Below are positions 3,245 to 58,361 of a stretch of DNA of 64,000 nucleotides, in pieces. The stretch is from positions 124,001 through 188,000 of the IMG/VR virus record IMGVR_UViG_3300015261_000001; one strand, 5' to 3'. Position 1 is the first letter of the stretch, and each line of letters starts with the position of its first letter. The notes beneath the pieces are model-generated. The model was not told the origin of the DNA. It did not search any database and saw only the letters and a list, made by a program, of their open reading frames with translations. The position numbers and the translations under genes were made by a program.

Positions 3245-3254
3245 GTAATATAGG
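3245..3254 (-). promoter_or_regulatory. Putative phage early promoter (CCTATATTAC)
   Basis: Intergenic exact copy of the motif also at 32755 and 58219; contains TATATTAC, the phiKZ early-promoter consensus as I recall it. Confidence 0.6.
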
Positions 3255-3326
3255 CCTGAGACCTTCTAAAAGTTAAAATAAAAACAACTACCCAGTACGC
3301 ACCTTACGGTGCGTACTGGGCGTGTT

Positions 3327-8626: not shown

Positions 8627-8636
8627 AGAATATAGG
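8627..8636 (-). promoter_or_regulatory. Variant of the early-promoter motif (CCTATATTCT)
   Basis: Shares the + strand context AATATAGGTTT(G/C)AAATA with the 58219 copy. Confidence 0.5.
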
Positions 8637-8667
8637 TTTGAAATATTTTGGCTCAAACCCGTTGGTG

Positions 8668-32754: not shown

Positions 32755-32764
32755 GTAATATAGG
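32755..32764 (-). promoter_or_regulatory. Putative phage early promoter (CCTATATTAC)
   Basis: + strand ATTAGTAATATAGGTCTAAAATAC versus ATTAGTAATATAGGTTTCAAATAC at ~58215. Confidence 0.65.
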
Positions 32765-32775
32765 TCTAAAATACC

Positions 32776-43560: not shown

Positions 43561-46413
43561 ATGTTCGGTTTGTTTTCGGTTCAAGCCAAGCCTACTGGAG
43601 ACTATGTGCACATCACAGGAGTTTCCTATTACGATCTTGCAAAGGACATTGAAAAGTTTTACAGCAGTACGTTGGTTACCAAGCACCAGATCAAGCGCGA
43701 ATCATGGGACACCATCAAAGTCCACAACTTCTTTCTGGTAGAATTGCACAACATACTGGGAGAGCTGCTTAAGATACGGAACCTGCGTAGTCGGCGCCGC
43801 GCTCTGAGTGAACTGAAACAAGTCCTGGAAACAGACACTTGGATCAAAGACACGATTAACCCCAGCGGCACTCCGTTCAACATGAAACGTTTGGCACGGT
43901 TTGAAACTAAGCCGTTCCCTAAGCAACAAGAATTCTTAGAGCAGTATCCGGTGATTACCCACAGTTACCATTTACGAGGTCTGTTACTGGACTCCGTACC
44001 GGGCAGCGGTAAAGCCATGCCGCTCAGCACTAAGGTCAAAGTACCCAACGGGTGGAAACAATTACGCGACCTTAAGATGCACGACCCAGTCATAACCCCT
44101 GATGGGAAGGTGGCTAAAGTCGTTGGTATTCACCCCCAAGGAAAGACCGAAGTTTACCGCTTCTTCTTTGAAGATGGGCGTTACGCAGATTCTCACCCGG
44201 AACATCTCTGGGCAGTCGATGAAGTCAGTATCGTCGACGATCAAGAAATGGCCAGCGTTGGTAATGTCACTACCACCAAGGACATTATCCAGCACTTCGG
44301 TGAATTCGAATACCGTATTCCTCTGGTAGAGAAAGTCGGGGGATTCAATTACAGTGAAACGGGCACGCCTCGCCACATGGCGACTCATTTACTGGAATCT
44401 GGTATAGCGATAGATGACACAGTATTAGAACTTCCGTACTCCGAGCGCTTTGCGATTATCCGGGCTATGGTGGAGTTCTCTGCGTTGCACATCGGCGACC
44501 ATCATCTGTCCCTGATGCATGAGAACAAACAAGGTTGCGACAACTTCCGCCAGCTCATGTGGTCTCTGGGCGGTATTGCTCACGAACCGCTTAACGTCGG
44601 TGGCCTGTATAAGGTGATCTGTAAGCACCGGGACGTGGACCGTTTAATCGAAGACCTCGTGGGTAAGACTCCTGAAGTCAAGAAGATGTTCAATACCAAG
44701 CAGTACAAGGACCTTAAACTGCGCATTACCGGGTATGAGCATCGGGAAGCTGAGGAAACCCTGTGTATCTCGATTGACAGTGCAGACAAACTGTACATTG
44801 TTGATAACTACGTGGTCACTCACAACACCTTTACTTCGATTGCTTGGTCGGCGCTGGTTAACGACGCACCTACGGTGATCCTGTGTCCTCTGAACATCGT
44901 GGATGAAGTGTGGGTCAACCAACTGAACCACCACCACAAAGAAGCCCCGTTCATCTGGACCAGTAAATCGAATATCCCGTTACGTGAAGGGTTCGATTTC
45001 TACGTCGTGCATTACGACTACATGACCTCGGGTAACGCAGCCTACCTCCAAAAGTTCCTCGCAGACCTGCAAAAGAAACATAAGGGTGGCGTAAAGCTGA
45101 TTATTGACGAATGTCACAACTTCAACGACCCTAAAGCCGCGAGAACCAAACGACTCATCGAGTGGGCAGACCAGAAACTGTTCGGGCATTACCTGCCGGT
45201 GTCTGGAACCGCGTTAAAAGCCCTAGGGAGCGAGATCTACCCCGTACTGTGCCTCTTGGACCTGTTCTTCGACAGCAAGGCCAGAGAGTTCTTTATGGCG
45301 TCGTATGGACGCAACCGTCCTGCCCTGAACGAACTCCTTGCCCACCGTATCGGCAGGACCAAGTTTACCATCCCTGAATTAACCGGTATGGGTAATCCAC
45401 CCCCTATTGAGTTGGTCAGGGTGAAAATCCCTAACTCTGACAAATACACCCTCGACGTTATCCGCTTAGAGATGCAGACTTACATTACCGACCGTGTGAA
45501 GTTCTATGAATTTCATATGCCGAAGATGTTGGAGTTCTATAACGACTGTTTACTGTCGTATGAATATTCCATTGGTAAGAACCTGCAAGCTCAAGAAGAC
45601 TTCGTTAAGTATAAGCAGATCGTCCACCGTTTCCGTACCCAGGGTTATAACAGCTTTACTGACGTACAAGACGGGATGTTCTGTAAACGGGTAGAGGAAG
45701 AGATTGAAAAGGGTCTACGGGGTCCAGAGCTAAAGGAATTCCGCAATATCAAGTCTGCTGTGAAGTACCTTGGTTTGAAACTGCGTGGAGAGGCACTGGG
45801 TAACGTCCTAGGTCGTGCTCGTATCAATGCGATTAAAGACACCATTGCCTATGCTGATATTCCGGGAATGATCGATGATGCGGAGAAGAAGACCATTATC
45901 TTCACTTCGTATGTTGATGCTTTGAAACTCTGTGAAGAATACCTCACCAAAGAAGGCTACCCCGTGGTAACCGTCTACGGGGAGAACAGTAAGGATCGGG
46001 ATGACGCGATTAAGCGTTTAGCTAACGACCCTCGGGTTAAAGCAGGGATTGCCGTCTTTGATTCGCTTAAGGAAGGCTACCCACTCCTGATGTGTAATTT
46101 GACCATCCTCCTGAACAGCCCTTTCCGCGACTATGAGTTGAAACAAGTCATTGCACGTACGTGGCGTACTGGGCAAGATGCCGAGTGCTTCTACAAGCTG
46201 CTGGATTTGGACACCGGGGATAAGCTCAATATCACCACCCGGAGTATCAACATCATGGAGTGGTCTCGTGAGCAAGTTGATGCTTTACTGTCACGGGAAA
46301 GTGGTCACGCTCTACTGGGGAATATCTCGGGGCAAGAAATGTTCGATATGAGCATGGAAGCCTTTACCCTCCCTGTCCGTATTAACCAAAACGCAATGTC
46401 CCTCTTTCGATAA
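43561..46413 (+). CDS. SNF2/DEAD-like SF2 helicase (phiKZ gp203-like) containing an intein
   Basis: Walker A PGSGK|T split by the intein; LIIDECHN (DExH), VSGTALKA, SLKEGYPL and QVIARTWRTGQ motifs. Confidence 0.9.
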   Translation: MFGLFSVQAKPTGDYVHITGVSYYDLAKDIEKFYSSTLVTKHQIKRESWDTIKVHNFFLVELHNILGELLKIRNLRSRRRALSELKQVLETDTWIKDTINPSGTPFNMKRLARFETKPFPKQQEFLEQYPVITHSYHLRGLLLDSVPGSGKAMPLSTKVKVPNGWKQLRDLKMHDPVITPDGKVAKVVGIHPQGKTEVYRFFFEDGRYADSHPEHLWAVDEVSIVDDQEMASVGNVTTTKDIIQHFGEFEYRIPLVEKVGGFNYSETGTPRHMATHLLESGIAIDDTVLELPYSERFAIIRAMVEFSALHIGDHHLSLMHENKQGCDNFRQLMWSLGGIAHEPLNVGGLYKVICKHRDVDRLIEDLVGKTPEVKKMFNTKQYKDLKLRITGYEHREAEETLCISIDSADKLYIVDNYVVTHNTFTSIAWSALVNDAPTVILCPLNIVDEVWVNQLNHHHKEAPFIWTSKSNIPLREGFDFYVVHYDYMTSGNAAYLQKFLADLQKKHKGGVKLIIDECHNFNDPKAARTKRLIEWADQKLFGHYLPVSGTALKALGSEIYPVLCLLDLFFDSKAREFFMASYGRNRPALNELLAHRIGRTKFTIPELTGMGNPPPIELVRVKIPNSDKYTLDVIRLEMQTYITDRVKFYEFHMPKMLEFYNDCLLSYEYSIGKNLQAQEDFVKYKQIVHRFRTQGYNSFTDVQDGMFCKRVEEEIEKGLRGPELKEFRNIKSAVKYLGLKLRGEALGNVLGRARINAIKDTIAYADIPGMIDDAEKKTIIFTSYVDALKLCEEYLTKEGYPVVTVYGENSKDRDDAIKRLANDPRVKAGIAVFDSLKEGYPLLMCNLTILLNSPFRDYELKQVIARTWRTGQDAECFYKLLDLDTGDKLNITTRSINIMEWSREQVDALLSRESGHALLGNISGQEMFDMSMEAFTLPVRINQNAMSLFR
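44014..44826 (+). mobile_element. Class 3 (Ala-start) intein, 271 aa, with degenerate LAGLIDADG remnant
   Basis: Starts AMPLSTKV after GSGK; block B HPEHLW (Trp); block F TLCISID (Cys); block G YVVTHN (Thr, His-Asn); +1 residue Thr. Confidence 0.9.
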
Positions 46414-47887: not shown

Positions 47888-48487
47888 TTATCCTCTCTCG
47901 CCCTTTACACCGGTAGGTTCAATAGGGTCAATCCCCAAACGCTCTAGGTGACTGTTAATGTTACCACAGGTCACCAAATAAGAGACGTTACTGAACCCAA
48001 AGACCAACCCCACCAAACTGGTCACTTCACCCAGCCCTTCATGAGAGGCCGCCCAATACTGTCTATCATCACAGCAGACAGTGACTTCTTCATGACGTTT
48101 CATTCCGCTAGGGGTGTAAATGACTCCTTTCTCCTCAATGTTGCTAGAGGAGTTCAACGTCAGGAGGTCTTCCCAACTACCGAATACAATCACCCCATTG
48201 ATACTGGTCACCATAGGGATAGTTTTCAACTCGTTACTGACCCAGTCTAACAACTCCTGTAGATCAGCACACCCGGCATGTTCCCTGCCAAAGGATTCAC
48301 TGTCTACCGTCCAATTGGATTTAGCCAATACAGGAATGGTCTTACCCAGATACTCCATATCCTGCATATGGTGAGTGCCACGGATCTCAAATGTGATACC
48401 GACCGTGGCGGCTTGTTTCTTAAGGTTGTCAATACGGGGTTGATGATACTCCCATTGACCACTCAGTACGCTGTAAGGGCAACTCAT
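47888..48487 (-). CDS. Hypothetical protein
   Basis: 199 aa; overlaps the upstream gene by 4 nt. Confidence 0.6.
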   Translation of the reverse strand: MSCPYSVLSGQWEYHQPRIDNLKKQAATVGITFEIRGTHHMQDMEYLGKTIPVLAKSNWTVDSESFGREHAGCADLQELLDWVSNELKTIPMVTSINGVIVFGSWEDLLTLNSSSNIEEKGVIYTPSGMKRHEEVTVCCDDRQYWAASHEGLGEVTSLVGLVFGFSNVSYLVTCGNINSHLERLGIDPIEPTGVKGERG

Positions 48488-48873
48488 GGAATCACATCCC
48501 AGGCAATGTTGGTATTACCCCGACCAATACCTTGATTAGGGTCTTCTTTGACCTTCTCTACGAACGAGTCGCACAGTTCACGAGCCAACTGAGGATCCAG
48601 AGGGCGTACATGAGCACCGGGGGCTAACTCAGTCCATACGCCCTCAACGATAGCCTTGATGTTCTCAGCGATCCCCATGTGCACCTCAGCCAACATCAAT
48701 GCCTCATCCAGACTGCGAGCCATGACTTGAGGAATAGGGTCCAATCCTTGATGACCCGGGTCGAAGTACACACAGAACATGCCATACGTGTCGTTAATCG
48801 ACAGTTGCATATTCACCTTGACTTCAGCAGCCTTCACTTGGAGGGCTTTAAAGCGTTCTTCAAGAGTTGACAT
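48484..48873 (-). CDS. Hypothetical protein
   Basis: 129 aa; overlapping cluster. Confidence 0.6.
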   Translation of the reverse strand: MSTLEERFKALQVKAAEVKVNMQLSINDTYGMFCVYFDPGHQGLDPIPQVMARSLDEALMLAEVHMGIAENIKAIVEGVWTELAPGAHVRPLDPQLARELCDSFVEKVKEDPNQGIGRGNTNIAWDVIP

Positions 48874-49411
48874 TTAAGCCACCCCGTGTAAAGAGTCGTT
48901 TAATCAACAACCACAACTTACGTGGTTTACTGGTGCGGACAAAGGGAGTGCCTTTACCGGTCATTTGGAGAGCCCCTCGTCCGTGGTATTTGAATGGGTC
49001 AATTTCTACAGGTTGTGCGATCGGGTAGTTATCCTCAACCAGGAAACCCCCTGCAAACACCTTCTTCGGTTCCGCGTGATGCGGGTGACCGGTATAAGCC
49101 TTGGCATCATAACCACGCCGAGACAGTTGTTTACCCAGTTCATCGAATTGATGACTGTTAACAGCGTAGACGGTCAAATAGCAACCGGCTAATGGAATAC
49201 GGAGTTGCAACCAGTTAAAGAACGACGCTGGTTGTTTGCAGTTACCCAGTTTAATCCCCAACAGCAATAACACCTCACGATGAGCGAGACATGGGATACC
49301 GTTTACATAGCCAACCATCAGCTTACCGTAATTGGTCACCAGTCCCAGGTGAGGATCACGAACAATAAGGTCTTTAATCTTGTGTTTACGATTTGGCATT
49401 ACTTTGCTCAT
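48860..49411 (-). CDS. Hypothetical basic protein
   Basis: Likely start MSKVM at 49411 (183 aa); the longer track start lies inside the terminator region. Confidence 0.55.
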   Translation of the reverse strand: MSKVMPNRKHKIKDLIVRDPHLGLVTNYGKLMVGYVNGIPCLAHREVLLLLGIKLGNCKQPASFFNWLQLRIPLAGCYLTVYAVNSHQFDELGKQLSRRGYDAKAYTGHPHHAEPKKVFAGGFLVEDNYPIAQPVEIDPFKYHGRGALQMTGKGTPFVRTSKPRKLWLLIKRLFTRGGLNVNS

Positions 49412-49462
49412 TATGTTGGTTAACACTATAACAATGGAACACAGGCAAAAATAAAGAGTAAA

Positions 49463-49491
49463 TACCCACCTCCCCATAAGGGAGGCAGGTA
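49463..49491 (-). terminator. Terminator after the lyase gene
   Basis: TACC..CCTCCC / GGGAGG..GGTA stem followed by TTTATTTTTGCC on the minus strand. Confidence 0.6.
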
Positions 49492-49502
49492 GTCGTAATC
49501 GG

Positions 49503-50498
49503 TTATTTCAGGAGATCTCGTTGCGCCATAGACCAGTAACGGACACCACGTCCCTTGGTGGGGTCTACCGTGGCCAGAATAGCGTCCAGTTTATCGAGGT
49601 TAGCCAGTGCGGTCTTCTTAGCCCCTCGGCTAATATTGCCCTGTATCTGAACAATCAACTTATTCACCACCTCTTGCAGTTCTTCAGGGACGTCAGTAAT
49701 CAGCACCCGCTCGTGACTGTCCAGAGCAAAGGTTTCCCCTACCCGCCAATAAGTGTCAGTATCGAGGTTAATAGCATCGAGTTCGATAGCGTCCCCGTGA
49801 TAGACGTCCAACTCAAACAAGACGATCTGTCCTTGACCTTCTTGCTGTTGTTCGTACGGCATGGTGATATCAGTTTGACAGTAGACCCCGGCTTTTGCAT
49901 AGAGACCGGTATCCTGACTGTAGGAACCGTCCATATTGATCGCTGTAGCCCAGGATTTAGCGTCTGCCTGATTCCAGTTAAAGGCGGCGATGAAAGTACC
50001 CTTATCAAAACCAAACAAAAGGTCGAAGATTTGCCCGCGTTTAACCCCTCTTACCAACACGTATTCAGTTTCCTTAGCCAAGAAGGTTTTGGCCACTTGT
50101 ACGTTCAAGTAAAACGAGTCATCTACCTTGTCGTAATACCACTGACCCTTTGCCAGAGGACGGGTGGAACTACCGTGCCACTGAATACTGATGGCTTTAC
50201 CCGCAGGACCGAGGTCCATAATGGCTTGACGTACCGCAATGGCGTTGAATCCGTGCTGATCAATCTTGATGGCGGTCTTACGCCCTGTAACGGGGTCAAA
50301 TTCCCGCAATTCAGAACGCCCGTATTTAGTGTTCTGGGTGGGTTGCAAATCTTCGCCCTTAGTAGGGCTGGTAGCGATGATCCGATCTTTCTTACTGGTG
50401 TCCCAGAACGCATTATTGAGTGTAGGTAGATCCGTTACCGATGTGGTGACGTTAGTAGGGTCGGTATGGTTGAAGCAATTGATCTTGGCGAAAGGCAT
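49503..50498 (-). CDS. Polysaccharide lyase family 7 (alginate lyase 2)-like protein
   Basis: All three PL7 signature segments in order: YGRSELRE, ISIQWHG and LYAKAGVYCQ; no signal peptide; extra ~70-aa C-terminal region. Confidence 0.8.
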   Translation of the reverse strand: MPFAKINCFNHTDPTNVTTSVTDLPTLNNAFWDTSKKDRIIATSPTKGEDLQPTQNTKYGRSELREFDPVTGRKTAIKIDQHGFNAIAVRQAIMDLGPAGKAISIQWHGSSTRPLAKGQWYYDKVDDSFYLNVQVAKTFLAKETEYVLVRGVKRGQIFDLLFGFDKGTFIAAFNWNQADAKSWATAINMDGSYSQDTGLYAKAGVYCQTDITMPYEQQQEGQGQIVLFELDVYHGDAIELDAINLDTDTYWRVGETFALDSHERVLITDVPEELQEVVNKLIVQIQGNISRGAKKTALANLDKLDAILATVDPTKGRGVRYWSMAQRDLLK

Positions 50499-50574
50499 AA
50501 CGCGTAATCCTCTAAAATAAACCTCCCTTCATAGGGCGGGCATAGGATCTGATGCAAAAAATAAAGGAGTACCA

Positions 50575-50596
50575 CCTACCCCCTTACGGAGGTAGG
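50575..50596 (-). terminator. Terminator of the early gene cluster
   Basis: Minus strand CCTACCTCC-GTAA-GGGGGTAGG (U.G wobble, GNRA loop) followed by TTTATTTTTTGC. Confidence 0.75.
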
Positions 50597-50612
50597 CAGC
50601 ATTCACAAGGTG

Positions 50613-50912
50613 TTATTTACGGTTGTTACGGTAGTGACGAATGAAGTTCAGCAGATCACCGTATACCCGTCTGCTGATAGAACGCAACTTCAGTTCTTCC
50701 AGCCTAACTTCTAGGTCCACTAACTGCGCCTGGCGGATCTTCAACGCCTCAGCGTACCACTCAGCCCGTTGGGTTAACTGGATCTGCAAGGCCGATTGGA
50801 ACTCCTTGGCGTTTTCAGCTTCGGTCACCATCCACGTATGCGCCTGAGTGAGGACTTTGATGGTCTCTTTCTGGGCATCGATTTTGGCTTGTAGCCAAGA
50901 ACGGTACATCAC
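50613..50912 (-). CDS. Hypothetical coiled-coil protein
   Basis: 99 aa; heptad pattern; overlapping cluster. Confidence 0.6.
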   Translation of the reverse strand: MMYRSWLQAKIDAQKETIKVLTQAHTWMVTEAENAKEFQSALQIQLTQRAEWYAEALKIRQAQLVDLEVRLEELKLRSISRRVYGDLLNFIRHYRNNRK

Positions 50913-51097
50913 AGGTGCATCTCCGCTTCCATGGACTCGATCATGCCTTCGAACGTTTCACTCGGTTCGGAGACATCCACGTCATCAATTGCACCATGCC
51001 AATAGCCGTCGACAAAGAAGAACTCCAAGCAGACGTGGTCATCGGTGCACGCTTGTTGAATAGCCAGTACGCGGTCCTGTATCGATTTATCACTCAT
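50909..51097 (-). CDS. Small acidic hypothetical protein
   Basis: 62 aa; 4-nt overlaps on both sides. Confidence 0.55.
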   Translation of the reverse strand: MSDKSIQDRVLAIQQACTDDHVCLEFFFVDGYWHGAIDDVDVSEPSETFEGMIESMEAEMHL

Positions 51098-51609
51098 TCC
51101 TTACCCTCATCCCACCAACCGTTAACCAGCAGTACTCGCTTGATCTTCAGTTGGCTAGCCAGTTGTTTATCGTGAACCGCTACCAAGTCCTCACGGAACG
51201 GGATAGCGTCATTAATCTCTTTCTTCAACACACTCAGCAGGTAGCCCTGACGGCGATACTCGTCCATCAAGGTTACCCGTGTACGCAATAACAAGGTTTC
51301 AGGTAAGCTGGTAGGAAGGGCGGTTAACAAATCACCGCTCTCTACCGCCTTTAGTAAAGCAGGGCGAAAGTTGCGGTCAGCATATTCCACCAATGCCTTA
51401 TCCAGCCGATCAATAACCCGTTGATACCGACCCCGGGCGTATTCACCAGCAGGTGCAGGGGAACTGTAATTCAAGTCCCCCAGTGCATCCTGATAACGGT
51501 GCAGCTCGGAGGAGTAAAACGCATACTCCTCCTGAGTGCCGATAAACAACTCATCTGAGTCTTCTTGTTTCTTCTTGCGGAACTCAGCGATACTGGTTAC
51601 TGTGCCCAT
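51094..51609 (-). CDS. Hypothetical protein
   Basis: Likely start MGTVTSIAEFRKKK (171 aa). Confidence 0.6.
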   Translation of the reverse strand: MGTVTSIAEFRKKKQEDSDELFIGTQEEYAFYSSELHRYQDALGDLNYSSPAPAGEYARGRYQRVIDRLDKALVEYADRNFRPALLKAVESGDLLTALPTSLPETLLLRTRVTLMDEYRRQGYLLSVLKKEINDAIPFREDLVAVHDKQLASQLKIKRVLLVNGWWDEGKE

Positions 51610-51884
51610 GGCGTTACCTTCCTCGATAAGCAATTAGGGTGACGCTCGTAAAAGGAGGCTAATTCCTTATCAGCCTGTTCTGCCAGTTGTTTGCCTTCGC
51701 TATGCAGGTGGTCAGCGATCTGAGGATCACGGTTCTGCATGGACAAAGCCAAGATACTACCGGCTTGATCGAACTTGTGTTCAATCGCCTTCAACTCACG
51801 TGCACGGTTCAATACAGCCTGTACATTTGGAACTTCCATTTCAACTTCTCCTTGATTAACACGCAGTAAAAACTGGGAACTCAT
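51597..51884 (-). CDS. Hypothetical protein
   Basis: 95-aa helical ORF. Confidence 0.55.
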   Translation of the reverse strand: MSSQFLLRVNQGEVEMEVPNVQAVLNRARELKAIEHKFDQAGSILALSMQNRDPQIADHLHSEGKQLAEQADKELASFYERHPNCLSRKVTPWAQ

Positions 51885-51909
51885 AAAACGTACCTTTGGT
51901 GAGACTTAA

Positions 51910-52299
51910 TTACTCACAACAAGCGCGGAACACTTTCTCCCACTCTTCTTCAGTGCCCTTATAACCGTTGTTGACAGCCACCTCGTAAGGGAACTCTCGC
52001 TGCGGTTGAGGAACTCCGTCGTAGTGGTACTCAAAGAAGTAATCCGGGAGACTACCGTCAGGCAGGATATGCACTTCGGTGGTCCCCAGATAACCGATCA
52101 GACCCAATGCGCAGGTATCAGGATCAGTCTTCTTTTTCTTCTTCGGATAGAGCACCACCCCCGGCTCCAGCGTGAACTGCTTGTGGAACTCGCGGTCTTG
52201 CTGGATACGGGTATTCAAAGACTTCGTACCCCGCATCACGGTGGCTTTCAAATGCAACGCCAGACGCAGGGTTCGGCTATTTGCTTTAACGAGCGGCAT
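51910..52299 (-). CDS. Hypothetical protein with a C-terminal tail-fibre-type helical motif
   Basis: 129 aa; ends PYEVAVNNGYKGTEEEWEKV. Confidence 0.6.
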   Translation of the reverse strand: MPLVKANSRTLRLALHLKATVMRGTKSLNTRIQQDREFHKQFTLEPGVVLYPKKKKKTDPDTCALGLIGYLGTTEVHILPDGSLPDYFFEYHYDGVPQPQREFPYEVAVNNGYKGTEEEWEKVFRACCE

Positions 52300-52684
52300 A
52301 GCTTTCCTCCTGAATCAACCGATCCACTTCCGCCCAGCCTTCTTCAGGCATTCCAGAGATGGTGTAGGCTTTGTGCAGACGCGACATCAACTGCAACACG
52401 TCCTTACGTTCGAATACCGCAAACAACTGGTGGTACGACTCGTCCCGTTCTTCGCAGTCCAGATCCAGGTTAAACGACTGACCGTCTTCCATGCGTTTGA
52501 TCAGAGTCAGGTTGCTATCCTCACCTTTGACCCCTTCCACTTCCAACAGAGGCTGGTAGTAGTAGCTCTGATTACCGCCGTTCTCACCCTTGATAGCAAG
52601 AGGATCGAAGTCAGTCGGGTAGAACTTGGCAAACACTGTACCCGCTGGCAGGTACAGGAACTCTTTCAGATTAACAATCCTCAT
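52286..52684 (-). CDS. Hypothetical phage protein
   Basis: 132 aa; AGGA RBS. Confidence 0.65.
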   Translation of the reverse strand: MRIVNLKEFLYLPAGTVFAKFYPTDFDPLAIKGENGGNQSYYYQPLLEVEGVKGEDSNLTLIKRMEDGQSFNLDLDCEERDESYHQLFAVFERKDVLQLMSRLHKAYTISGMPEEGWAEVDRLIQEESYAAR

Positions 52685-52689
52685 CCTAC

Positions 52690-53028
52690 TTATCCCCTTA
52701 TTGGAATGATTTCGGCTGATTCAGGAGTAATCAGTTTCCACTCCCCCTCTACCATCAGTTCGATGGTCCAGCCTGTCTCTTTACTGGCATGGTCCCGTGC
52801 AGTCGCTAACCAGCTCTCAGCCATCAGGCGGAGGTTCTTGCGGGTCATCTCCTGCACCATGGCAACATCGCAGACAACGGTATCGCAGTTCTTGAACAGA
52901 CGGTTACTCATGTCCAAGCACGTGGCAATACGTTCCTTACGACTCTGGCCATGACGCAACCAATGCTCCAGCGCCTCAGGGGACTCAAACTCCTTCCCCC
53001 ACACATCTTTACGAATCACTGTCCCCAT
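52690..53028 (-). CDS. Hypothetical protein
   Basis: 112 aa; overlapping cluster. Confidence 0.6.
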   Translation of the reverse strand: MGTVIRKDVWGKEFESPEALEHWLRHGQSRKERIATCLDMSNRLFKNCDTVVCDVAMVQEMTRKNLRLMAESWLATARDHASKETGWTIELMVEGEWKLITPESAEIIPIRG

Positions 53029-53524
53029 TACGTTCTTTCGCCTCTTTTAACTGTTGACGGAGAGAATCAGGCGTCTTATGACCCCAGCTATCCAACACGA
53101 TAGGATTCTCAGGATTGTCTTTCAAATGAGTCCAGTACAACCGAGCACTCATGGCGCTAAAGAAGAACCGAGTCAAACGACGATCGGTGCCGTACTTGAA
53201 CACCACGTAGTAATGATCCACCGTACCGATAGGTTCATCGATCTGATAGAACAGGTAACCCGCTTCGCTAGCAATCGGACGCATACCCTCCCGACGCTTA
53301 TTGAAGTACGGCAAGAGCACTTCATCCCACCAACGACCCCGAGTCTTAATCGTGTTGCGCAGGTCGTCGGTAAACAACCGATGGAAAGGACGGATCATCC
53401 CTTCGATGCAAGGACCCAACTGATACTCGTGCAAGGTCTCCTGCATCTTCTCTTCGGTAGTGGGCAAGAAGTTACTCACCCGTACCGCCAGCAACTTACT
53501 TAAACGCTTATGTTGCTTTGCCAT
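53009..53524 (-). CDS. Paralog-family protein 1 (N-terminal KQHKRL domain plus shared C-terminal domain)
   Basis: 171 aa; YYVVFKYG...TRFFFS..SARLYWTHL...SWGHKT. Confidence 0.7.
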   Translation of the reverse strand: MAKQHKRLSKLLAVRVSNFLPTTEEKMQETLHEYQLGPCIEGMIRPFHRLFTDDLRNTIKTRGRWWDEVLLPYFNKRREGMRPIASEAGYLFYQIDEPIGTVDHYYVVFKYGTDRRLTRFFFSAMSARLYWTHLKDNPENPIVLDSWGHKTPDSLRQQLKEAKERNGDSDS

Positions 53525-54053
53525 AAATCTTCCATCCTAAGAATTTGTAAATATCGAGGGTCGAACGGAACCCATACTCAGCCGTCCCCGGTACGCCCTT
53601 ACGTTCATGTAACCACGTCAGGTGTTCGAAGTAACGGTAAGCATGATCCTTCTGAATGAAGAAGAAGGTTTTGCTCTTGTTGAATCCTGTTTCAAAGACA
53701 ACAAAGAACCCACCTACTCGGTTGAGTTTCACCACAGGTGCCACACACATCGTGCCGGGGTGTAAAACTTCCGCTGGATACAACCGACTGTCCACCGGTT
53801 CCATGGGTTGATGTTTATCAAACCAAGGGATATCCACATACTCCCACCAGCGCCCACGACGTTCCATGGAGACGCGTACCTGAGTACGAATGGCTAAGTC
53901 AGCCACCCAGTCACCGAAGTCTTCACTGATAGCATTTTTCTTAAACGCTACCAGCGCTGCTTCAATCTCTTCTACGCTTTTGTAATCCCCGCAATGAACA
54001 TCACCATGTGCCCAGTACAGAAGTCTGACTAAGCGCTTGTGTTGTTTAGGCAT
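53508..54053 (-). CDS. Paralog-family protein 2
   Basis: Likely start MPKQHKRL at 54053 (181 aa); FFVVFETG...TFFFIQ..HAYRYFEHL...EYGFRS. Confidence 0.7.
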   Translation of the reverse strand: MPKQHKRLVRLLYWAHGDVHCGDYKSVEEIEAALVAFKKNAISEDFGDWVADLAIRTQVRVSMERRGRWWEYVDIPWFDKHQPMEPVDSRLYPAEVLHPGTMCVAPVVKLNRVGGFFVVFETGFNKSKTFFFIQKDHAYRYFEHLTWLHERKGVPGTAEYGFRSTLDIYKFLGWKIYGKAT

Positions 54054-54537
54054 CACGTTTGTCCTTAGGCTGATCGTAAACAATCCCAGCGTGAGTCACA
54101 CGACCGCCCTCAGCGTGGACCTTGTCGTAGAACGCTTGCGACATGGGTGGCATCTCATCCTCGATGGTGTCAGGAACCGAAGCCATAACGATTTCTTTCA
54201 GGTCATTCTTTTTCATGCTGTTACCCTCACCGGTTAATACGTAGTTAAGTTCTTCCAACGATTTACTTCCCCACACATCAGGGTTAGCAGGCGCTGGGGT
54301 TTCACCAATCAAGTACAGGTAATAACTCTTCGCCCCACTGTTCGTGATAAAGAAGCGAGTCTTCTCTTCATCGTCTCCCTCTTGGAAAACTACGAAGTAA
54401 CGGGGGTGGTTACCCACCTTTCCTCGGATACTGGCAAACACAATCCTGTGCTCGTCTACAAGGTTCACAGGAACTGTTGCAGCGAGCATGACAGTCATCA
54501 GTTGGTTCTTGTTGAAGCGTGGCGCTACCGCGTCCAT
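54046..54537 (-). CDS. Paralog-family protein 3
   Basis: 163 aa; AGGAG RBS; YFVVFQEG...TRFFITNSGAKSYYLYL...WGSKSLEEL. Confidence 0.7.
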   Translation of the reverse strand: MDAVAPRFNKNQLMTVMLAATVPVNLVDEHRIVFASIRGKVGNHPRYFVVFQEGDDEEKTRFFITNSGAKSYYLYLIGETPAPANPDVWGSKSLEELNYVLTGEGNSMKKNDLKEIVMASVPDTIEDEMPPMSQAFYDKVHAEGGRVTHAGIVYDQPKDKRDA

Positions 54538-54654
54538 AGGGACTCCTAGCCTAGGTTAAAATAAAAGCGCATACACGCACCCCCGTCCAGACCCCCTGAT
54601 TTCATTGGGTTTCGTAGGGGTACCCTATTTTTTCGCACTAAAAACAAAGCAAAT

Positions 54655-54885
54655 CTAATTCTTCTTCATATCCACTAGAAAACGAAGTCTTTCAAACAAC
54701 TTTGGCATATCACTTCCATACACCAGATAATCTTTTCCCTGCATTGAACAGATACAATTACGCCCAATAATTGCCTCCTTACTCAATGCTTCTAACAGAT
54801 CAATTAGACCCGGTAGAGTAATGTTGTTAATCAATTCTTCTATTTCTTTTTGTTCTCTGTCTCCCATGATGCTTATTACTCCCAT
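54655..54885 (-). CDS. Hypothetical protein in AT-rich patch
   Basis: 76 aa or slightly shorter; about 34% GC in the lines I counted. Confidence 0.55.
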   Translation of the reverse strand: MGVISIMGDREQKEIEELINNITLPGLIDLLEALSKEAIIGRNCICSMQGKDYLVYGSDMPKLFERLRFLVDMKKN

Positions 54886-55205
54886 AGTTGTTTAGTTGAT
54901 TGTTTAAGTTCATCTAAAGTTTGATAACCGTAGTTGTAGGGTTCTGGTTGGTTACCCGGTGTAAGCTGTCTTAAGTACTGAATGTATCCATCTGCTGTAT
55001 GTCTATCTACAAAGAACCTAAGCGTATTACTAGGTTCGTCTTGATGATAAGCGGCATACACCATATGGTCTGCACAACCTTCTGGGTTAACCATCCCTAG
55101 AAGAATACGTTGCTGACATTTACTCCTATTGAGTGAACACTTCCACCCATAAGGAGAATACTTGTTTAAGAGTATTATCTTGTTAAGATCAAAATTAATT
55201 GTCAT
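54876..55205 (-). CDS. Paralog-family protein 4 (AT-rich copy)
   Basis: 109 aa; VYAAYHQD...TLRFFVD..TADGYIQYL...NYGYQTLDEL. Confidence 0.65.
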   Translation of the reverse strand: MTINFDLNKIILLNKYSPYGWKCSLNRSKCQQRILLGMVNPEGCADHMVYAAYHQDEPSNTLRFFVDRHTADGYIQYLRQLTPGNQPEPYNYGYQTLDELKQSTKQLWE

Positions 55206-55229
55206 AGCGGGTATTCCTCTAGGGGTTAG

Positions 55230-55565
55230 TTAGAGCGCGTGTTTGTTGCGGAAGACTAGGATCTCTTCGAGGTTACTCCACCCCCACTCATTTAGATTAG
55301 TAGGGGCGTCGCCTGCTCTGAAGTTACGCAGGTAGTTAATGTAACTACGAGCGCCTGTGTTAGTGGTGAACAGTCTAGCGGTAGCTTCGTAGTTATCGCG
55401 TACGTAGACAGCGAAGACTTTAGAGCAGGGGGTATTGCCTGGTTGCAGTTGAGCGTACGTGATCTCTTGTATCGGTTGGGTGACATCACTCACGATAGAG
55501 TACACGTTACCGAGTACGGGAGCTGCGAGTACGAGTTCCTTAAGTTGCTCTGGGGTCATGATCAT
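55230..55565 (-). CDS. Paralog-family protein 5
   Basis: 111 aa; VFAVYVRD...ARLFTTNTGARSYINYL...EWGWSNLEEI. Confidence 0.7.
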   Translation of the reverse strand: MIMTPEQLKELVLAAPVLGNVYSIVSDVTQPIQEITYAQLQPGNTPCSKVFAVYVRDNYEATARLFTTNTGARSYINYLRNFRAGDAPTNLNEWGWSNLEEILVFRNKHAL

Positions 55566-55864
55566 TCCTTTAGGCGGAGGGTGTAGTTACCGTCAGTATC
55601 TTTAACGATTACCACGCCATGTTCTTTAGCGATCTTGTCTGCATCTTCCCTGTGCTTCATGGAGTTGATGACAGATTGTTCTCTGAGTCTAACTGTGCCG
55701 AGGTGGTGAACCTCTCGCATGGCTTGCTCAGACTTAAAGAGGAGTTCTTGTATCTGGATAACAGCTTCGTAAGGGATCCTAGGACCGCCTTTGCTGGTAC
55801 GCCGCTCGCGACGTTCAGACATCTTGCGATCTCTCCAGCCTTGCATCTGTACGACTTCGCCCAC
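55562..55864 (-). CDS. Hypothetical protein
   Basis: 100 aa (GTG start, AGGAG RBS). Confidence 0.6.
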   Translation of the reverse strand: MGEVVQMQGWRDRKMSERRERRTSKGGPRIPYEAVIQIQELLFKSEQAMREVHHLGTVRLREQSVINSMKHREDADKIAKEHGVVIVKDTDGNYTLRLKE

Positions 55865-55911
55865 GGCTTACTCCTTAAGGAGCTGCCCGGTTAAGAGCAG
55901 CTCGCGTAGGT

Positions 55912-56970
55912 TTACTCTGGTTGGTTAGGTTCGTCAGGCTTATCGAAGTCCTTGAGGCTTTCTACGGCTTCTTCGGCTTGACGGACGTGACGAGGTTTGA
56001 AGCCCGTGGTGTTAACGGCGTTCTCTGCTTGAGCACGGAGTTGGTCAGGTGTTAACTTATCCAGACCATCAGCCTCTGCATAAGCAAGGACTGTTTGTTC
56101 CACCGGCAGAGGCAGGTTCAGTGGTGGTACTTCCCCGGTAGGGTTTTCACGCATGAAGTAAGCCAGCTGAGCTTTACGGTGAGCGTACTCACCTTGGAAC
56201 GGACTGTCTAACACAGGGTCAGTCTTGTCCAAACCCTTCAGATCACCCGGTGTCAGATAGCTAAGGCCCGACGCTTTGATCAGCATACTTTCAACGTTGG
56301 CTTCACTGACAACACTGGGGGTATCGAGGTCACGGTACAAACGGGCACGGCTCAGGTTACTCCCCATGCCCGGACGACCAAAGCGACCACCACCGAGTAC
56401 AACGATATCATTCAGCGAACCGTCAGGGTTACGAGGTGCATCAGGATCAATGCTTACCTCTACACCCGGCTCACCCCTTGACCGTTTCCAATTTTCCATC
56501 TCTTCTACAGTCAGACGCTTCATTGCAGGGTTTGGTATCTCCCCATCAAGTTCAACGCCTGTCTTGCCAGCACCAACCTTCAGCCGACCGACGAACTGTT
56601 GGTTCTGCGGCTCATCAGCCGCGTTGTCAGCCTTGGCTTGGATCAGTGTGGTCATGTGGTCGCCAATGCTCACACGAGCTTCACCAGGCTTACGCAGTGG
56701 GTAAACACCGCCCAGCGCATGAAACGTGATGAACGCAGCCTCAGCGTCTGCGCCGTGCATCATTTCAACTACTTGCGGATACTTCTTGATGAAGTGACGA
56801 TTTTGGTAGCAGAAGTCCAACGTGTTAGCAATTTCTGCCAGCTTACTCACGTCACCTTGCATGTTGCGCCAGCACTCCACGAAACCTTCTACCGCTTCAT
56901 CGGTATGCTTGTGACCTTTGAAGTGGAATTGGTTGAGGAGTTTGGCAATACGGAGATGTTTCTTACGCAT
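55912..56970 (-). CDS. Hypothetical multi-segment protein
   Basis: 352 aa; the N-terminus MRKKHLRIAKLL resembles paralogs 1 and 2. Confidence 0.65.
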   Translation of the reverse strand: MRKKHLRIAKLLNQFHFKGHKHTDEAVEGFVECWRNMQGDVSKLAEIANTLDFCYQNRHFIKKYPQVVEMMHGADAEAAFITFHALGGVYPLRKPGEARVSIGDHMTTLIQAKADNAADEPQNQQFVGRLKVGAGKTGVELDGEIPNPAMKRLTVEEMENWKRSRGEPGVEVSIDPDAPRNPDGSLNDIVVLGGGRFGRPGMGSNLSRARLYRDLDTPSVVSEANVESMLIKASGLSYLTPGDLKGLDKTDPVLDSPFQGEYAHRKAQLAYFMRENPTGEVPPLNLPLPVEQTVLAYAEADGLDKLTPDQLRAQAENAVNTTGFKPRHVRQAEEAVESLKDFDKPDEPNQPE

Positions 56971-56982
56971 GACGAGTACCTT

Positions 56983-57300
56983 TTAAACTTGAATGAGAAT
57001 GCTGGAGAGATAAACGTCGTCGATAAAAGCAACTACCAAGCGCTGACTCTGCTTCAACTCTTGGTAGGCTTTCAGGACGTCCGAAGGATTAACCACAAAC
57101 AAATGAGCAGTGTCATCTGCACAGGGTACTTCCAAACAGAAGCCACGCACAAATTCATCTACTGGTTCATCTTTGAGGATGCACTCAGTACCGAATTTGT
57201 ACTCAACCATCCATTCACGGCCGATCAGCTTAATACCGCTGTCAAGCGTGAATACGACGCTATCGTTGTCATCACTGGGGGTTGGGAAGGGAGTACTCAT
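56983..57300 (-). CDS. Hypothetical protein
   Basis: 105 aa; overlapping cluster. Confidence 0.6.
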   Translation of the reverse strand: MSTPFPTPSDDNDSVVFTLDSGIKLIGREWMVEYKFGTECILKDEPVDEFVRGFCLEVPCADDTAHLFVVNPSDVLKAYQELKQSQRLVVAFIDDVYLSSILIQV

Positions 57301-57953
57301 ATCAGCCTCCTAGCGCCAACCCAGACGCTCTTGTACAGAGGATTAGGCTCACGCAGTGTCTTAACCACCTGAAACATGTCTTTCTCATCAAAGAGGAAGA
57401 TAAATGTCTCTACTGCGATGAAGATGTCGCCATCCGGTGCAGGTGCGAACACCGGCGTTCCATGATGATCCACCCACTTCATTTTGATATCAGGGCAGAA
57501 GCACAACGCGTACTCTTTCGAGAACGTAGCGATCTCCTGCTTGATCTGATAATCCCATCCCAAGGACAAAGCGTACAGCTCGTCCATCAGACACGTTATT
57601 CCCCCCACAGTAATCAATACCAAATTACCGTAGTTCTGCTCAATACCGCTGCGATCCTTCTGCACCACTCGGCGCGCCAGATCAGCAGCAGTAGGTTTGT
57701 ACCAATCGATCGGCTCGTCGACCGGCAGGTCTGGAACCAACTGGAGACTACGCAATTGCTCCAGACCTTCACCGATCATACCGCTTTGGTCACCGTGCAT
57801 CGAAACATGATGCTCAGTTTCCGTGATAACCTTCCGAAGACTTTCAGTCATATCGAAAGGCTTTTGGTTCAACGCTTTGGCTGCGGAAGGATTCTCCATA
57901 GCCGCATCGTAAAGACCCCCTAGTCCTTCGATCCCCTCGTTCTTATCAACCAT
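57297..57953 (-). CDS. Hypothetical protein
   Basis: 218 aa; overlaps both neighbours. Confidence 0.65.
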   Translation of the reverse strand: MVDKNEGIEGLGGLYDAAMENPSAAKALNQKPFDMTESLRKVITETEHHVSMHGDQSGMIGEGLEQLRSLQLVPDLPVDEPIDWYKPTAADLARRVVQKDRSGIEQNYGNLVLITVGGITCLMDELYALSLGWDYQIKQEIATFSKEYALCFCPDIKMKWVDHHGTPVFAPAPDGDIFIAVETFIFLFDEKDMFQVVKTLREPNPLYKSVWVGARRLI

Positions 57954-58191
57954 GTCTTACCACCCCTTGTTTGTTTTCGTTGGGTTCATATTGCAGTTTG
58001 TCGAGACGAGCTTGCATTAGTGCCGCTTTGTTACGAGTTTCCCGGCTCTTATCCCTCAGATAGCGACGCTCCCGAGTGCAAGTAGAAGCGCCCGCCATAC
58101 GGGAGAGCTTAGCTGCTTCTCGGGTAAGAGACGTGATCCGGGAACTCAACATCTTGACGAGTTCTTCTACCTTAGTCATCTGATTCACCAT
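57946..58191 (-). CDS. Small basic coiled-coil protein, first gene of the early cluster
   Basis: 81 aa, Arg/Lys-rich; starts 28 nt after the promoter motif. Confidence 0.55.
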   Translation of the reverse strand: MVNQMTKVEELVKMLSSRITSLTREAAKLSRMAGASTCTRERRYLRDKSRETRNKAALMQARLDKLQYEPNENKQGVVRHG

Positions 58192-58218: not shown

Positions 58219-58228
58219 GTAATATAGG
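58219..58228 (-). promoter_or_regulatory. Putative phage early promoter (CCTATATTAC) driving the 50.6-58.2 kb cluster
   Basis: Exact motif in an AT-rich intergenic region; 22 of 24 flanking bases match the 32755 copy. Confidence 0.65.
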
Positions 58229-58361
58229 TTTCAAATACACTCCAAGTTAATGCAAAATCATACAAGCAGGGTCAAAAGGATAGAAAGCTTAGTTCTATTT
58301 TATTTGGCAATTTTATGGTCTCTGACCCCTCCACTCCTTTAGCAGCGCGGATAACCTAACC

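What the first reader, a model, noticed from the sequence alone, without database searches (positions are those of the whole stretch)
53009..55565. Tandem array of five highly diverged paralogs sharing an unnamed ~55-aa domain
Seen by eye: five neighbouring early-cluster ORFs share [YF]xVx[FY]...tRfF.....A..Y..yL...(W/Y)G..sleel: YYVVFKYGTDRRLTRFFFSAMSARLYWTHL..SWGHKT; FFVVFETGFNKSKTFFFIQKDHAYRYFEHL..EYGFRS; YFVVFQEGDDEEKTRFFITNSGAKSYYLYL..VWGSKSLEEL; VYAAYHQDEPSNTLRFFVDRHTADGYIQYL..NYGYQTLDEL; VFAVYVRDNYEATARLFTTNTGARSYINYL..EWGWSNLEEI. No DNA-level repeat remains. Inference: an old, diversified gene accordion of the kind seen for anti-defence or host-interaction proteins, each copy perhaps tuned to a different host target.
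Basis: partly seen in the sequence, partly recalled or inferred. Interest (0 to 1): 0.65.

Follow-up and report, generated by a model that had tools for sequence, protein, structure and literature searches.

The report
Orphan paralog family in jumbo phage
Five neighbouring small genes of an EL-like jumbo phage are true, ancient paralogs of a roughly 100-residue protein domain that no database names, sitting in a variable early-type operon; what they do is still unknown.

Summary
Five minus-strand ORFs (53009-55565) share one domain: pairwise BLASTP reaches E~1e-7, and leave-one-out HMMs recover each omitted copy as the best non-training hit among 2,521 ORFs of the 238-kb genome (E 4.5e-5 to 4.8e-14). 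There is no sixth copy and no DNA repeat. The domain is about 100 aa, not 55.

The genome is a complete jumbo phage from rhizosphere metagenomes. Its SNF2 helicase is 65% identical to Pseudomonas phage EL gp166.

Pfam, PHROGs, NCBIfam and PDB sequences gave no match. A confident model (pLDDT 86.6) has no significant fold match. A profile search of 1.84 billion representatives found 18 hits at E<=0.001, one of them spurious. Every member whose contig reached flanking genes lay at the same locus of EL-like phages.

Copy number is 0 (EL, Noxifer, L014), 1, at least 2, 4 or 5. Each window copy has a well-supported ortholog in another phage, so the duplications are old. Gene-wide dN/dS is 0.15-0.30.

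The array lies in an operon headed by an EL/phiKZ-type early-promoter motif. An accessory early binding-protein role (host takeover or counter-defence) is plausible but untested. "Accordion" in the recent-amplification sense is not supported.

The parts
53009..53524 (-). Paralog A (P0001, 171 aa), long form. An N-terminal basic helical module (aa 1 to about 80, MAKQHKRL...RGRWW) is followed by the core domain (aa about 75-167).
   Evidence: Its ortholog is P0009 in L001: 55% identity, tree support 100/100.
53508..54053 (-). Paralog B (P0002, 181 aa from the ATG), long form with the same N-terminal module as A. The canonical TNSGARSY loop has degenerated to QKDHAYRY.
   Evidence: Its ortholog P0021 is the only family copy in L007 (tree 100/100). 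B is absent from L001.
54046..54537 (-). Paralog C (P0003, 163 aa). The core is aa 1-110 and keeps the canonical TRFFITNSGAKSY...WG motif. A C-terminal add-on follows.
   Evidence: The L001 ortholog is 107 aa and lacks the add-on: 80% identity over 103 aa.
54064..54192 (-). C-terminal mini-module of C (aa about 116-158, ...PPMSQAFYDKVHAEGGRVTHAGIVYDQPK). It is a mobile peptide module found in other contexts in other jumbo phages.
   Evidence: It matches the C-terminal end of Noxifer gp015 at 71% identity, E 4e-7. It is a stand-alone 57-aa gene in L007 and an internal segment of a 461-aa protein in L008.
54655..54885 (-). A 76-aa ORF that is not a family member. It is the detached C-terminal module of D; relatives encode D and this part as one 182-aa protein.
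   Evidence: 81% identity to residues 112-181 of P0007. The sequence at the junction is shown. The same split state appears in contigs of two runs.
54876..55205 (-). Paralog D (P0004, 109 aa), core only in this phage. It is the most divergent lineage; the loop reads DRHTADGY.
   Evidence: Its orthologs P0007 and P0008 are 182 aa (tree 100/99).
55230..55565 (-). Paralog E (P0005, 111 aa; more likely 109 aa from the ATG at 55559), core only. It keeps TNTGARSY and WGW.
   Evidence: The structure model has pLDDT 86.6 and pTM 0.80. A minor co-existing variant in run X2 is heavily diverged across this gene.
55562..55864 (-). F1, a conserved 100-aa upstream neighbour (MGxVVQM...TVxLREQAVIxSM...). It lies directly before the first family member in 10 of the 12 loci that carry F1.
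   Evidence: No family annotation was found for it.
58219..58235 (-). Early-promoter-like motif TTTGAAACCTATATTAC at the head of the operon that contains the array.
   Evidence: It resembles the EL consensus WTTTYAAACCTACATTATY and contains the phiKZ motif TATATTAC (PMC7058600). In phages where transcripts were profiled, this class of motif marks early promoters (PMC7598289). The same motif lies upstream of the first cluster gene in 9 of 10 related loci.
50570..50601 (-). The first strong terminator-like hairpin downstream of the array on the coding strand (14 pairs followed by a T run). It is the probable end of the operon.

Best explanation
**What it is.** The five genes encode members of a previously unnamed protein family of about 100 residues. 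Every member whose genomic context could be read lies in an EL-like jumbo phage.

**Where it sits.** The genes lie in the middle of a variable operon of about 7.6 kb. The operon starts at an EL/phiKZ-type early-promoter motif, so the proteins are most likely made in the first minutes of infection by the injected virion RNA polymerase.

**Shown**
- Homology of the five copies.
- Old duplications, with orthologs in other phages.
- Purifying selection on each copy tested.
- Copy number of 0 to 5 at one syntenic locus.
- Modular fusion of the core to different N- or C-terminal add-ons.
- A confident alpha/beta model with no recognisable relative.

**Inferred**
- They are dispensable accessory proteins that act by binding rather than catalysis. 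The residues invariant across all copies (F, A, Y, L, G) are hydrophobic, aromatic or glycine, and are read here, without a structural check, as fold-maintaining.
- The single-copy "canonical" forms, and C and E here, keep a strongly conserved polar strand-to-helix loop (TRFFxTNSGA[RK]SY) plus WGW. This looks like a ligand site. A, B and D have lost it.
- The array therefore most likely holds functionally diverged binders used in host takeover or counter-defence.
For: - **Homology:**
- **Phage identity:** the helicase is 65% identical to EL gp166. The record is a complete 238-kb virus with direct terminal repeats.
- **No named family:**. No match to PDB sequences.
- **Fold:** pLDDT 86.6 with no significant fold match.
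- **Rarity:** 18 hits at E<=1e-3 in 1.84e9 representatives, one of them spurious.
- **Locus:** the members whose contigs reached flanking genes all lay between the ~1,250-aa/193-aa divergent genes and the SNF2 helicase.
- **Copy number:** 0 to 5.
- **Age:** ortholog pairs in the tree.
- **Selection:** dN/dS 0.15-0.30.
- **Early-promoter motif:** 16 of 17 genome matches are on the minus strand, and the exact query motif lies at the operon head. The motif is conserved in relatives. Literature: PMC7058600, PMC7598289.
- **Variable locus:** none of EL gp159-164 has a homolog in this genome.
- **Population variation:** divergence is concentrated in E and in the N-terminal module of B.
Against: - No expression data exist, because no RNA run holds the sequence. 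"Early" rests on a motif alone.
- There is no functional homology of any kind.
- Evolutionary rates are not higher than in neighbouring genes. This does not favour an arms race.
- The conserved loop could equally be a nucleic-acid contact.
- The structure is a prediction from a shallow alignment of 24 rows.
Confidence: 0.45

Rival explanations
1. The domain binds nucleic acid. It would be a strand-strand-strand-helix unit like the AP2 / integrase arm-type / WGR domains, and the proteins would be early regulators or protectors of phage or host DNA or RNA.
For: - A WGR cluster gives TM 0.51/0.63 in the Atlas search.
- Weak dsRBD and HicB rows appear in Foldseek.
- The long forms are basic, pI 9-10, with a K/R-rich N-terminal helix.
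- From my own knowledge, the strand followed by T/S-x-x-x-A-R-x-Y helix pattern resembles the AP2 "TFdTaEEAArAYD" segment. I did not test this.
Against: - The Pfam AP2 and WGR models find nothing in the genome even at E<=10. No member hits them in hmmscan.
- Several short forms are acidic, and the isolated core domains range from pI 5.0 to 9.6.
- The polar loop is lost in three of the five copies.
Confidence: 0.25
2. The family works as a two-part module with the conserved upstream protein F1, for example as a complex or a regulator-effector pair. The extra copies would be alternative partners of F1.
For: - F1 lies directly before the first family member in 10 of the 12 loci that carry F1, although most other cluster genes differ between loci.
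- The spacing between F1 and E is very tight, from a 4-nt overlap to a 2-nt gap depending on which E start is used.
- F1 is about as rare as the family.
Against: - All loci come from related, collinear phages, so adjacency may be inherited synteny.
- L014 has F1 and no family member. In L015 the member lies elsewhere in the cluster.
- No interaction evidence exists.
Confidence: 0.2
3. They are virion-packaged or inner-body structural proteins. Such proteins also form paralog families in phiKZ-like phages (my own knowledge).
For: Only the general precedent of paralogous head proteins in phiKZ-like phages.
Against: - The proteins are small.
- They lie in an operon headed by the early-type motif, not among structural genes.
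- They are absent from EL, Noxifer and L014.
Confidence: 0.05

Closest known systems
Variable early operon of Pseudomonas phage EL (gp159-gp164) and early operons of phiKZ-like phages
   Same: - Same syntenic place, next to the SNF2/DarB-like helicase gp166 homolog.
- Same strand logic.
- Headed by the same kind of conserved AT-rich motif (PMC7058600, PMC7598289).
   Different: - The gene content is completely different. None of EL gp159-164 has a homolog here, and EL has no copy of the domain.
- The cluster here is about four times longer.
Virus gene accordions and multigene families (poxvirus K3L amplification, ASFV MGFs, phage anti-defence islands); cited from my own knowledge
   Same: - Tandem paralogs in a variable region.
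- Copy number differs between relatives.
- The cluster is made of small proteins of unknown function.
   Different: - The copies are ancient: 19-30% identical, each with an ortholog elsewhere.
- No DNA repeat remains.
- Selection is purifying.
- No link to any defence system was shown.
AP2 / integrase arm-type / WGR beta-sheet-plus-helix DNA-binding domains
   Same: - A three- to four-stranded antiparallel sheet followed by a helix.
- These are recurrent weak structural hits for two paralog models.
   Different: - There is no sequence-level signal.
- The family has an extra N-terminal helix and a C-terminal WGW-helix element.

Membership tests
New family (EL-like jumbo-phage early paralogs, core about 100 aa) | Significant profile match over the whole core, including the invariant F, A, Y, L and G positions of the TRFF...A..Y...L...G motif. 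| tested here: met
   All five window ORFs match at E 5e-23 to 4e-36 against the 24-row profile. Leave-one-out E values are 4.5e-5 to 4.8e-14.
New family (EL-like jumbo-phage early paralogs, core about 100 aa) | Position in the variable operon between the ~1,250-aa/193-aa divergent genes and the SNF2 helicase. | tested here: met
   This holds for the window and for every related contig long enough to show flanking genes on at least one side.
Recent gene accordion (amplification of near-identical copies) | Near-identical tandem DNA copies. | tested here: not met
   No direct repeats longer than 20 nt. Protein identity is 19-30%.
Recent gene accordion (amplification of near-identical copies) | Copy-number differences between close relatives. 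| tested here: met
   Copy numbers of 0, 1, at least 2, 4 and 5. L014 and L002 differ by presence or absence of the gene, with 82-87% identical flanks.
AP2 domain (PF00847) | Match to the Pfam model. | tested here: not met
   No match in the genome at E<=10. No member matched in hmmscan.
AP2 domain (PF00847) | Fold similarity to solved AP2 domains. | tested here: inconclusive
WGR domain (PF05406) | Match to the Pfam model, or a clear fold match. | tested here: not met
dsRBD / HicB-N-like fold | Significant Foldseek or VIA match. | tested here: not met
   Foldseek E >= 1.1 and probability <= 0.13.
Known anti-defence proteins (anti-CRISPR, anti-RM and others) | Homology or fold match to a characterised inhibitor. 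| tested here: inconclusive
Early gene class of phiKZ/EL-like phages | Transcription from the vRNAP early promoter soon after infection. | not testable with these tools
   Only the motif is seen. No RNA run holds the sequence.

The most novel reading that the evidence does not exclude
The canonical members (single-copy forms, and C and E here) define a new fold class of immediate-early jumbo-phage effectors. Their invariant TNSGA[RK]SY/WGW site would bind one conserved host or nucleic-acid ligand. The degenerate copies (A, B, D) and the swapped N/C modules would retarget the same scaffold to other partners. That would make this a new counter-defence or host-takeover family that expands by assortment of ancient alleles between co-infecting phages.
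Probability: 0.2. Interest if true: 0.65.

Novelty: new member of a known kind. Interest (0 to 1): 0.4.

Why it matters
Nucleus-forming and related jumbo phages carry large blocks of early genes with no known function. These genes act before the phage is shielded, so they are candidates for host-takeover and counter-defence factors.

This work defines one such family cleanly:
- its boundaries;
- two architectures, a core-only short form and a long form with an N-terminal module;
- a conserved candidate site;
- a conserved neighbour, F1;
- a confident structure model;
- natural presence/absence and copy-number variants.

That gives experimenters a compact set of constructs and natural controls. 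It does not overturn any current view.

Tried and rejected
- **Family libraries.** Pfam, PHROGs and NCBIfam scans of the five proteins, of all 24 aligned members and of F1 gave only scattered hits. All were single-member matches at E >= 0.01.
- **PDB sequence profile.** Only haemoglobin, at E 0.29.
- **Fold searches.** Foldseek PDB, BFVD, ESM Atlas and VIA-wide on two models gave nothing above the chance level. The Atlas feature search scored 0.75, a lead only.
- **Phage DNA and protein searches.** Megablast of the region against phages found nothing. tblastn of C against phages found only the C-terminal mini-module, in Noxifer.
- **EL gp162 as a distant member.** It contains "VYTHFFTNRAELDSYIK", but the HMM gives E 0.44 and hhalign a probability of 0.9%. 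Rejected.
- **P0025.** A 129-aa metagenomic protein, borderline at hhalign probability 76.5%. Its contig is too short to give context.
- **P0026.** A 2,962-aa protein. The hit is spurious and comes from an identical 26-aa repeat.
- **N-terminal module of A and B versus the 352-aa ORF 55912-56970.** E 0.1-0.19, not significant.
- **Complex prediction of F1 with E.** The tool returned no verdict (score 0.03). This is not evidence either way.
- **The search for related loci.** The 24-row alignment was too diverse for pattern search. A narrower alignment found one IMG/VR genome with one copy.
Full report
**1. What is in the sequence**

The region 53009-55565 holds five minus-strand ORFs: A (171 aa), B (181 aa from the ATG at 54053), C (163 aa), D (109 aa) and E (111 aa). 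A sixth ORF of 76 aa (54655-54885) lies between C and D.

In a five-way alignment, F, A, Y, L and G of the shared core are invariant.

The similarity is well beyond chance:
- BLASTP at a nominal database size of 1e5 residues links the copies in the chain B-A-C-E-D, with E 1e-6 to 1e-7.
- I built HMMs from four copies and searched all 2,521 stop-to-stop ORFs (at least 40 aa, six frames) of the whole 238,193-bp genome. Each search returned the omitted copy as the best non-training hit, at E 4.5e-5 to 4.8e-14. The next ORF scored E 0.037 to 1.5.
- No sixth copy exists in the genome.
- No DNA repeat longer than 20 nt remains.

The conserved unit is about 100 residues, not about 55. A 108-position profile is matched over positions 2-107 in every copy.

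**2. Whose genome**

The window is bases 124001-188000 of a single 238-kb virus record with direct terminal repeats, rated complete. Its DNA is found in rhizosphere metagenomes. Megablast against phage genomes finds nothing.

The SNF2 helicase at 43561-46410 is 65% identical over its full length to gp166 of Pseudomonas phage EL. Gene order around it matches EL. So this is an uncultured EL-like jumbo phage.

**3. Transcription context**

The five genes lie in a run of minus-strand genes from 58191 downward. Just upstream, at 58219-58235, is TTTGAAACCTATATTAC.

- The three promoters annotated in EL read TTTTCAAACCTACATAATCAG and variants.
- A published table gives the EL consensus as WTTTYAAACCTACATTATY and the phiKZ motif as TATATTAC (PMC7058600).
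- A review states that such motifs lie upstream of presumed early operons. Wherever transcripts were profiled, they proved to be the early promoters used by the virion RNA polymerase (PMC7598289).
- In this genome the motif, allowing up to 4 mismatches, occurs 17 times, 16 of them on the minus strand.
- The same motif lies 40-95 nt upstream of the first cluster gene in 9 of 10 related loci.
- The first strong terminator-like hairpin on the coding strand is at 50601-50570.

I therefore read 58191 to about 50600 as one early-type operon of about 18 genes, with the array in its middle. This is an inference from motifs. No RNA run holds the sequence.

**4. Relatives**

No member hits Pfam, PHROGs or NCBIfam. 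The PDB sequence profile search was also empty.

- The word-indexed search found nine proteins at E <= 0.01, three of them the window's own.
- The exhaustive profile search of 1.84 billion representatives found 18 proteins at E <= 0.001. One of these (P0026) is a spurious repeat protein and one (P0025) is borderline.
- Every member whose contig reached flanking genes lies at the same place in a large EL-like phage contig (227-241 kb where complete). That place is between a divergently transcribed ~1,250-aa/~193-aa gene pair and the helicase. Other members sit on short contigs carrying the same cluster genes.

There are two architectures:
- Short, about 105 aa, core only.
- Long, about 157-181 aa, with an N-terminal basic helical module (MAKxxKRLxRLL...RGxWW) followed by the core.

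**5. Copy number and history**

| Locus | Family copies |
|---|---|
| EL, Noxifer | 0 |
| L014 | 0 |
| L002, L007, L008, L012, G001 | 1 |
| L010 | at least 2 |
| L001 | 4 (E-, D-, C-, A-like) |
| Window | 5 |

L014 has flanks 82-87% identical to L002, which carries one copy.

In a maximum-likelihood tree each window copy pairs with an ortholog from another phage: A with L001 (100/100), B with the single copy of L007 (100/100), D with P0007 and L001 (100/99), and E with P0010, L001 and P0017 (99/98). C groups with L001 and P0013 with weaker support (91/98). The duplications therefore predate the divergence of these phages, and single-copy phages carry different lineages. That pattern fits long-term birth-and-death with recombinational assortment. 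It does not fit a recent accordion.

Window-to-L001 ortholog identities are 54-80% for the family and 42-94% for neighbouring genes. Gene-wide dN/dS is 0.15-0.30 for the family and 0.02-0.45 for neighbours. dS is 0.65-2.7, so these values are rough. The genes are constrained and do not evolve unusually fast.

In one run (X2), however, a minor co-existing variant differs heavily. The differences are confined to gene E (55211-55618, including 161 nt replaced by 183 others) and to 53856-53985 in the N-terminal module of B, while the long flanks are identical. These are local hot spots in the population.

**6. Modularity**

- **D.** D is 182 aa in two relatives. In the window it is split into D (109 aa) and the 76-aa ORF, which is 81% identical to residues 112-181 of P0007. 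The split is the same in contigs from two runs.
- **C.** C carries a C-terminal peptide of about 40 aa that the L001 ortholog lacks. This peptide recurs in three other settings:
  - at the C-terminal end of Noxifer gp015 (71% identity, E 4e-7);
  - as a stand-alone 57-aa gene in L007;
  - inside a 461-aa protein in L008.
- **A and B.** They share the N-terminal module of the long forms.

**7. Structure**

E was modelled with a 24-row alignment and gave pLDDT 86.6 and pTM 0.80. The elements are helix 5-14, strands 17-22, 34-40 and 50-55, a short helix 56-62, strand 64-66, helix 69-79 and helix 99-110. In the A model the core is confident, with 10-residue block means of pLDDT 74-95. The N-terminal helices are not.

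| Search | Best result |
|---|---|
| Foldseek, PDB | E 0.54 |
| Foldseek, BFVD | E 0.088 |
| ESM Atlas, by shape | TM <= 0.51 by query |

All of these are below the level the tool gives for chance. Both paralog models retrieve the same weak set: AP2, a phage SPO1 capsid chain, 7eni_C and WGR. This suggests only a generic sheet-plus-helix arrangement. The Pfam AP2 and WGR models find nothing in the genome at E <= 10.

**8. Clues to function**

- The residues invariant across all members are hydrophobic, aromatic or glycine, and I read them as structural.
- The single-copy forms, and C and E here, keep a nearly identical polar segment at the strand-4-to-helix turn, TRFF(I/V)TNSGA(R/K)SY(F/Y)E(H/Y)L, followed by WGW. 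In A, B and D this segment has decayed.
- Long forms are basic (pI 9-10); short forms range from pI 5.2 to 9.5.
- There is no signal peptide, membrane segment or catalytic signature. I judged this by eye from the sequences.
- A conserved ~100-aa protein, F1 (55562-55864), lies directly before the first family member in 10 of the 12 loci that carry F1. F1 is equally unannotated. A complex prediction for F1 with E gave no verdict and counts as no evidence.

**9. Verdict**

The reading "old and diversified" is supported; "accordion" is not, in the recent-amplification sense; "anti-defence" is untested.

The most likely reading is a lineage-specific family of dispensable, early-expressed binding proteins whose paralogs have diverged in function. 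A nucleic-acid-binding role is the main rival.

The family is new to the databases. As a phenomenon, an orphan paralog family in a variable early region of a jumbo phage is familiar.

Noticed in passing
window 54655-54885 and 54876-55205 (-): Paralog D is split here into a 109-aa ORF and a 76-aa ORF. Two related contigs encode one 182-aa protein. The stop and frame change lie at about 54876-54885, and the same state appears in contigs from two runs.
   Followed up: yes
window 54064-54192 (-); L007 11449-11622; L008 5799-7184; L004 4001-4111: A peptide module of about 40 aa (PPMxQxFxDKVHAEGGRxTHxGIVYDQPK) is fused to C here. It is a free-standing 57-aa gene in L007, sits inside a 461-aa protein in L008, and lies at the C-terminal end of Noxifer gp015. 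Its function is unknown.
   Followed up: partly
window 55562-55864 (-): F1 is a conserved, unannotated ~100-aa protein found directly upstream of the first family member in 10 of the 12 loci that carry F1. One locus (L014) has F1 without the family.
   Followed up: partly
window 3245-3261, 8627-8643, 32755-32771, 58219-58235 (all -); 17 sites genome-wide: An EL/phiKZ-type early-promoter-like motif, TTTYRRACCTAYATTAY. Of 17 matches in the genome, 16 are on the minus strand. The motif is conserved upstream of the cluster in 9 of 10 related loci.
   Followed up: partly
window 55211-55618 and 53856-53985: Run X2 holds a minor co-existing variant. It is heavily diverged only in gene E, where 161 nt are replaced by 183 others, and in the N-terminal module of B. 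The long flanks are identical.
   Followed up: partly
window 49503-50498 (-): A 331-aa alginate lyase (PF08787, E 6.3e-16), 90% identical to its L001 ortholog, lies just after the operon's terminator-like hairpin. It hints at an alginate-producing host such as Pseudomonas.
   Followed up: partly
window 47888-58191 versus L003 (EL) 19960-22350: The cluster next to the helicase is about 10 kb here and about 2.4 kb in EL. None of EL gp159-164 has a homolog in this genome, so the locus is a replacement hot spot.
   Followed up: yes
L007 8521-9573: The 350-aa protein just downstream of the single family copy in L007 has an N-terminal stretch, FFAVFQDEGDSNAPKGYFFEKGRFFTERRYAKEFI, that resembles the core motif. 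The HMM did not detect it at E<1.
   Followed up: no
window 55912-56970 (-): The 352-aa ORF starts MRKKHLRIAKLL, which resembles the N-terminus of the long forms (MAKQHKRLSKLL). The HMM gives E 0.1-0.19 only.
   Followed up: partly
window 19760-28108 (+): A 2,782-aa ORF carries a glycoside hydrolase family 19 segment at residues 2269-2321 (E 7.2e-7). It occupies the place of EL gp183, which is annotated as a tail fiber protein.
   Followed up: no
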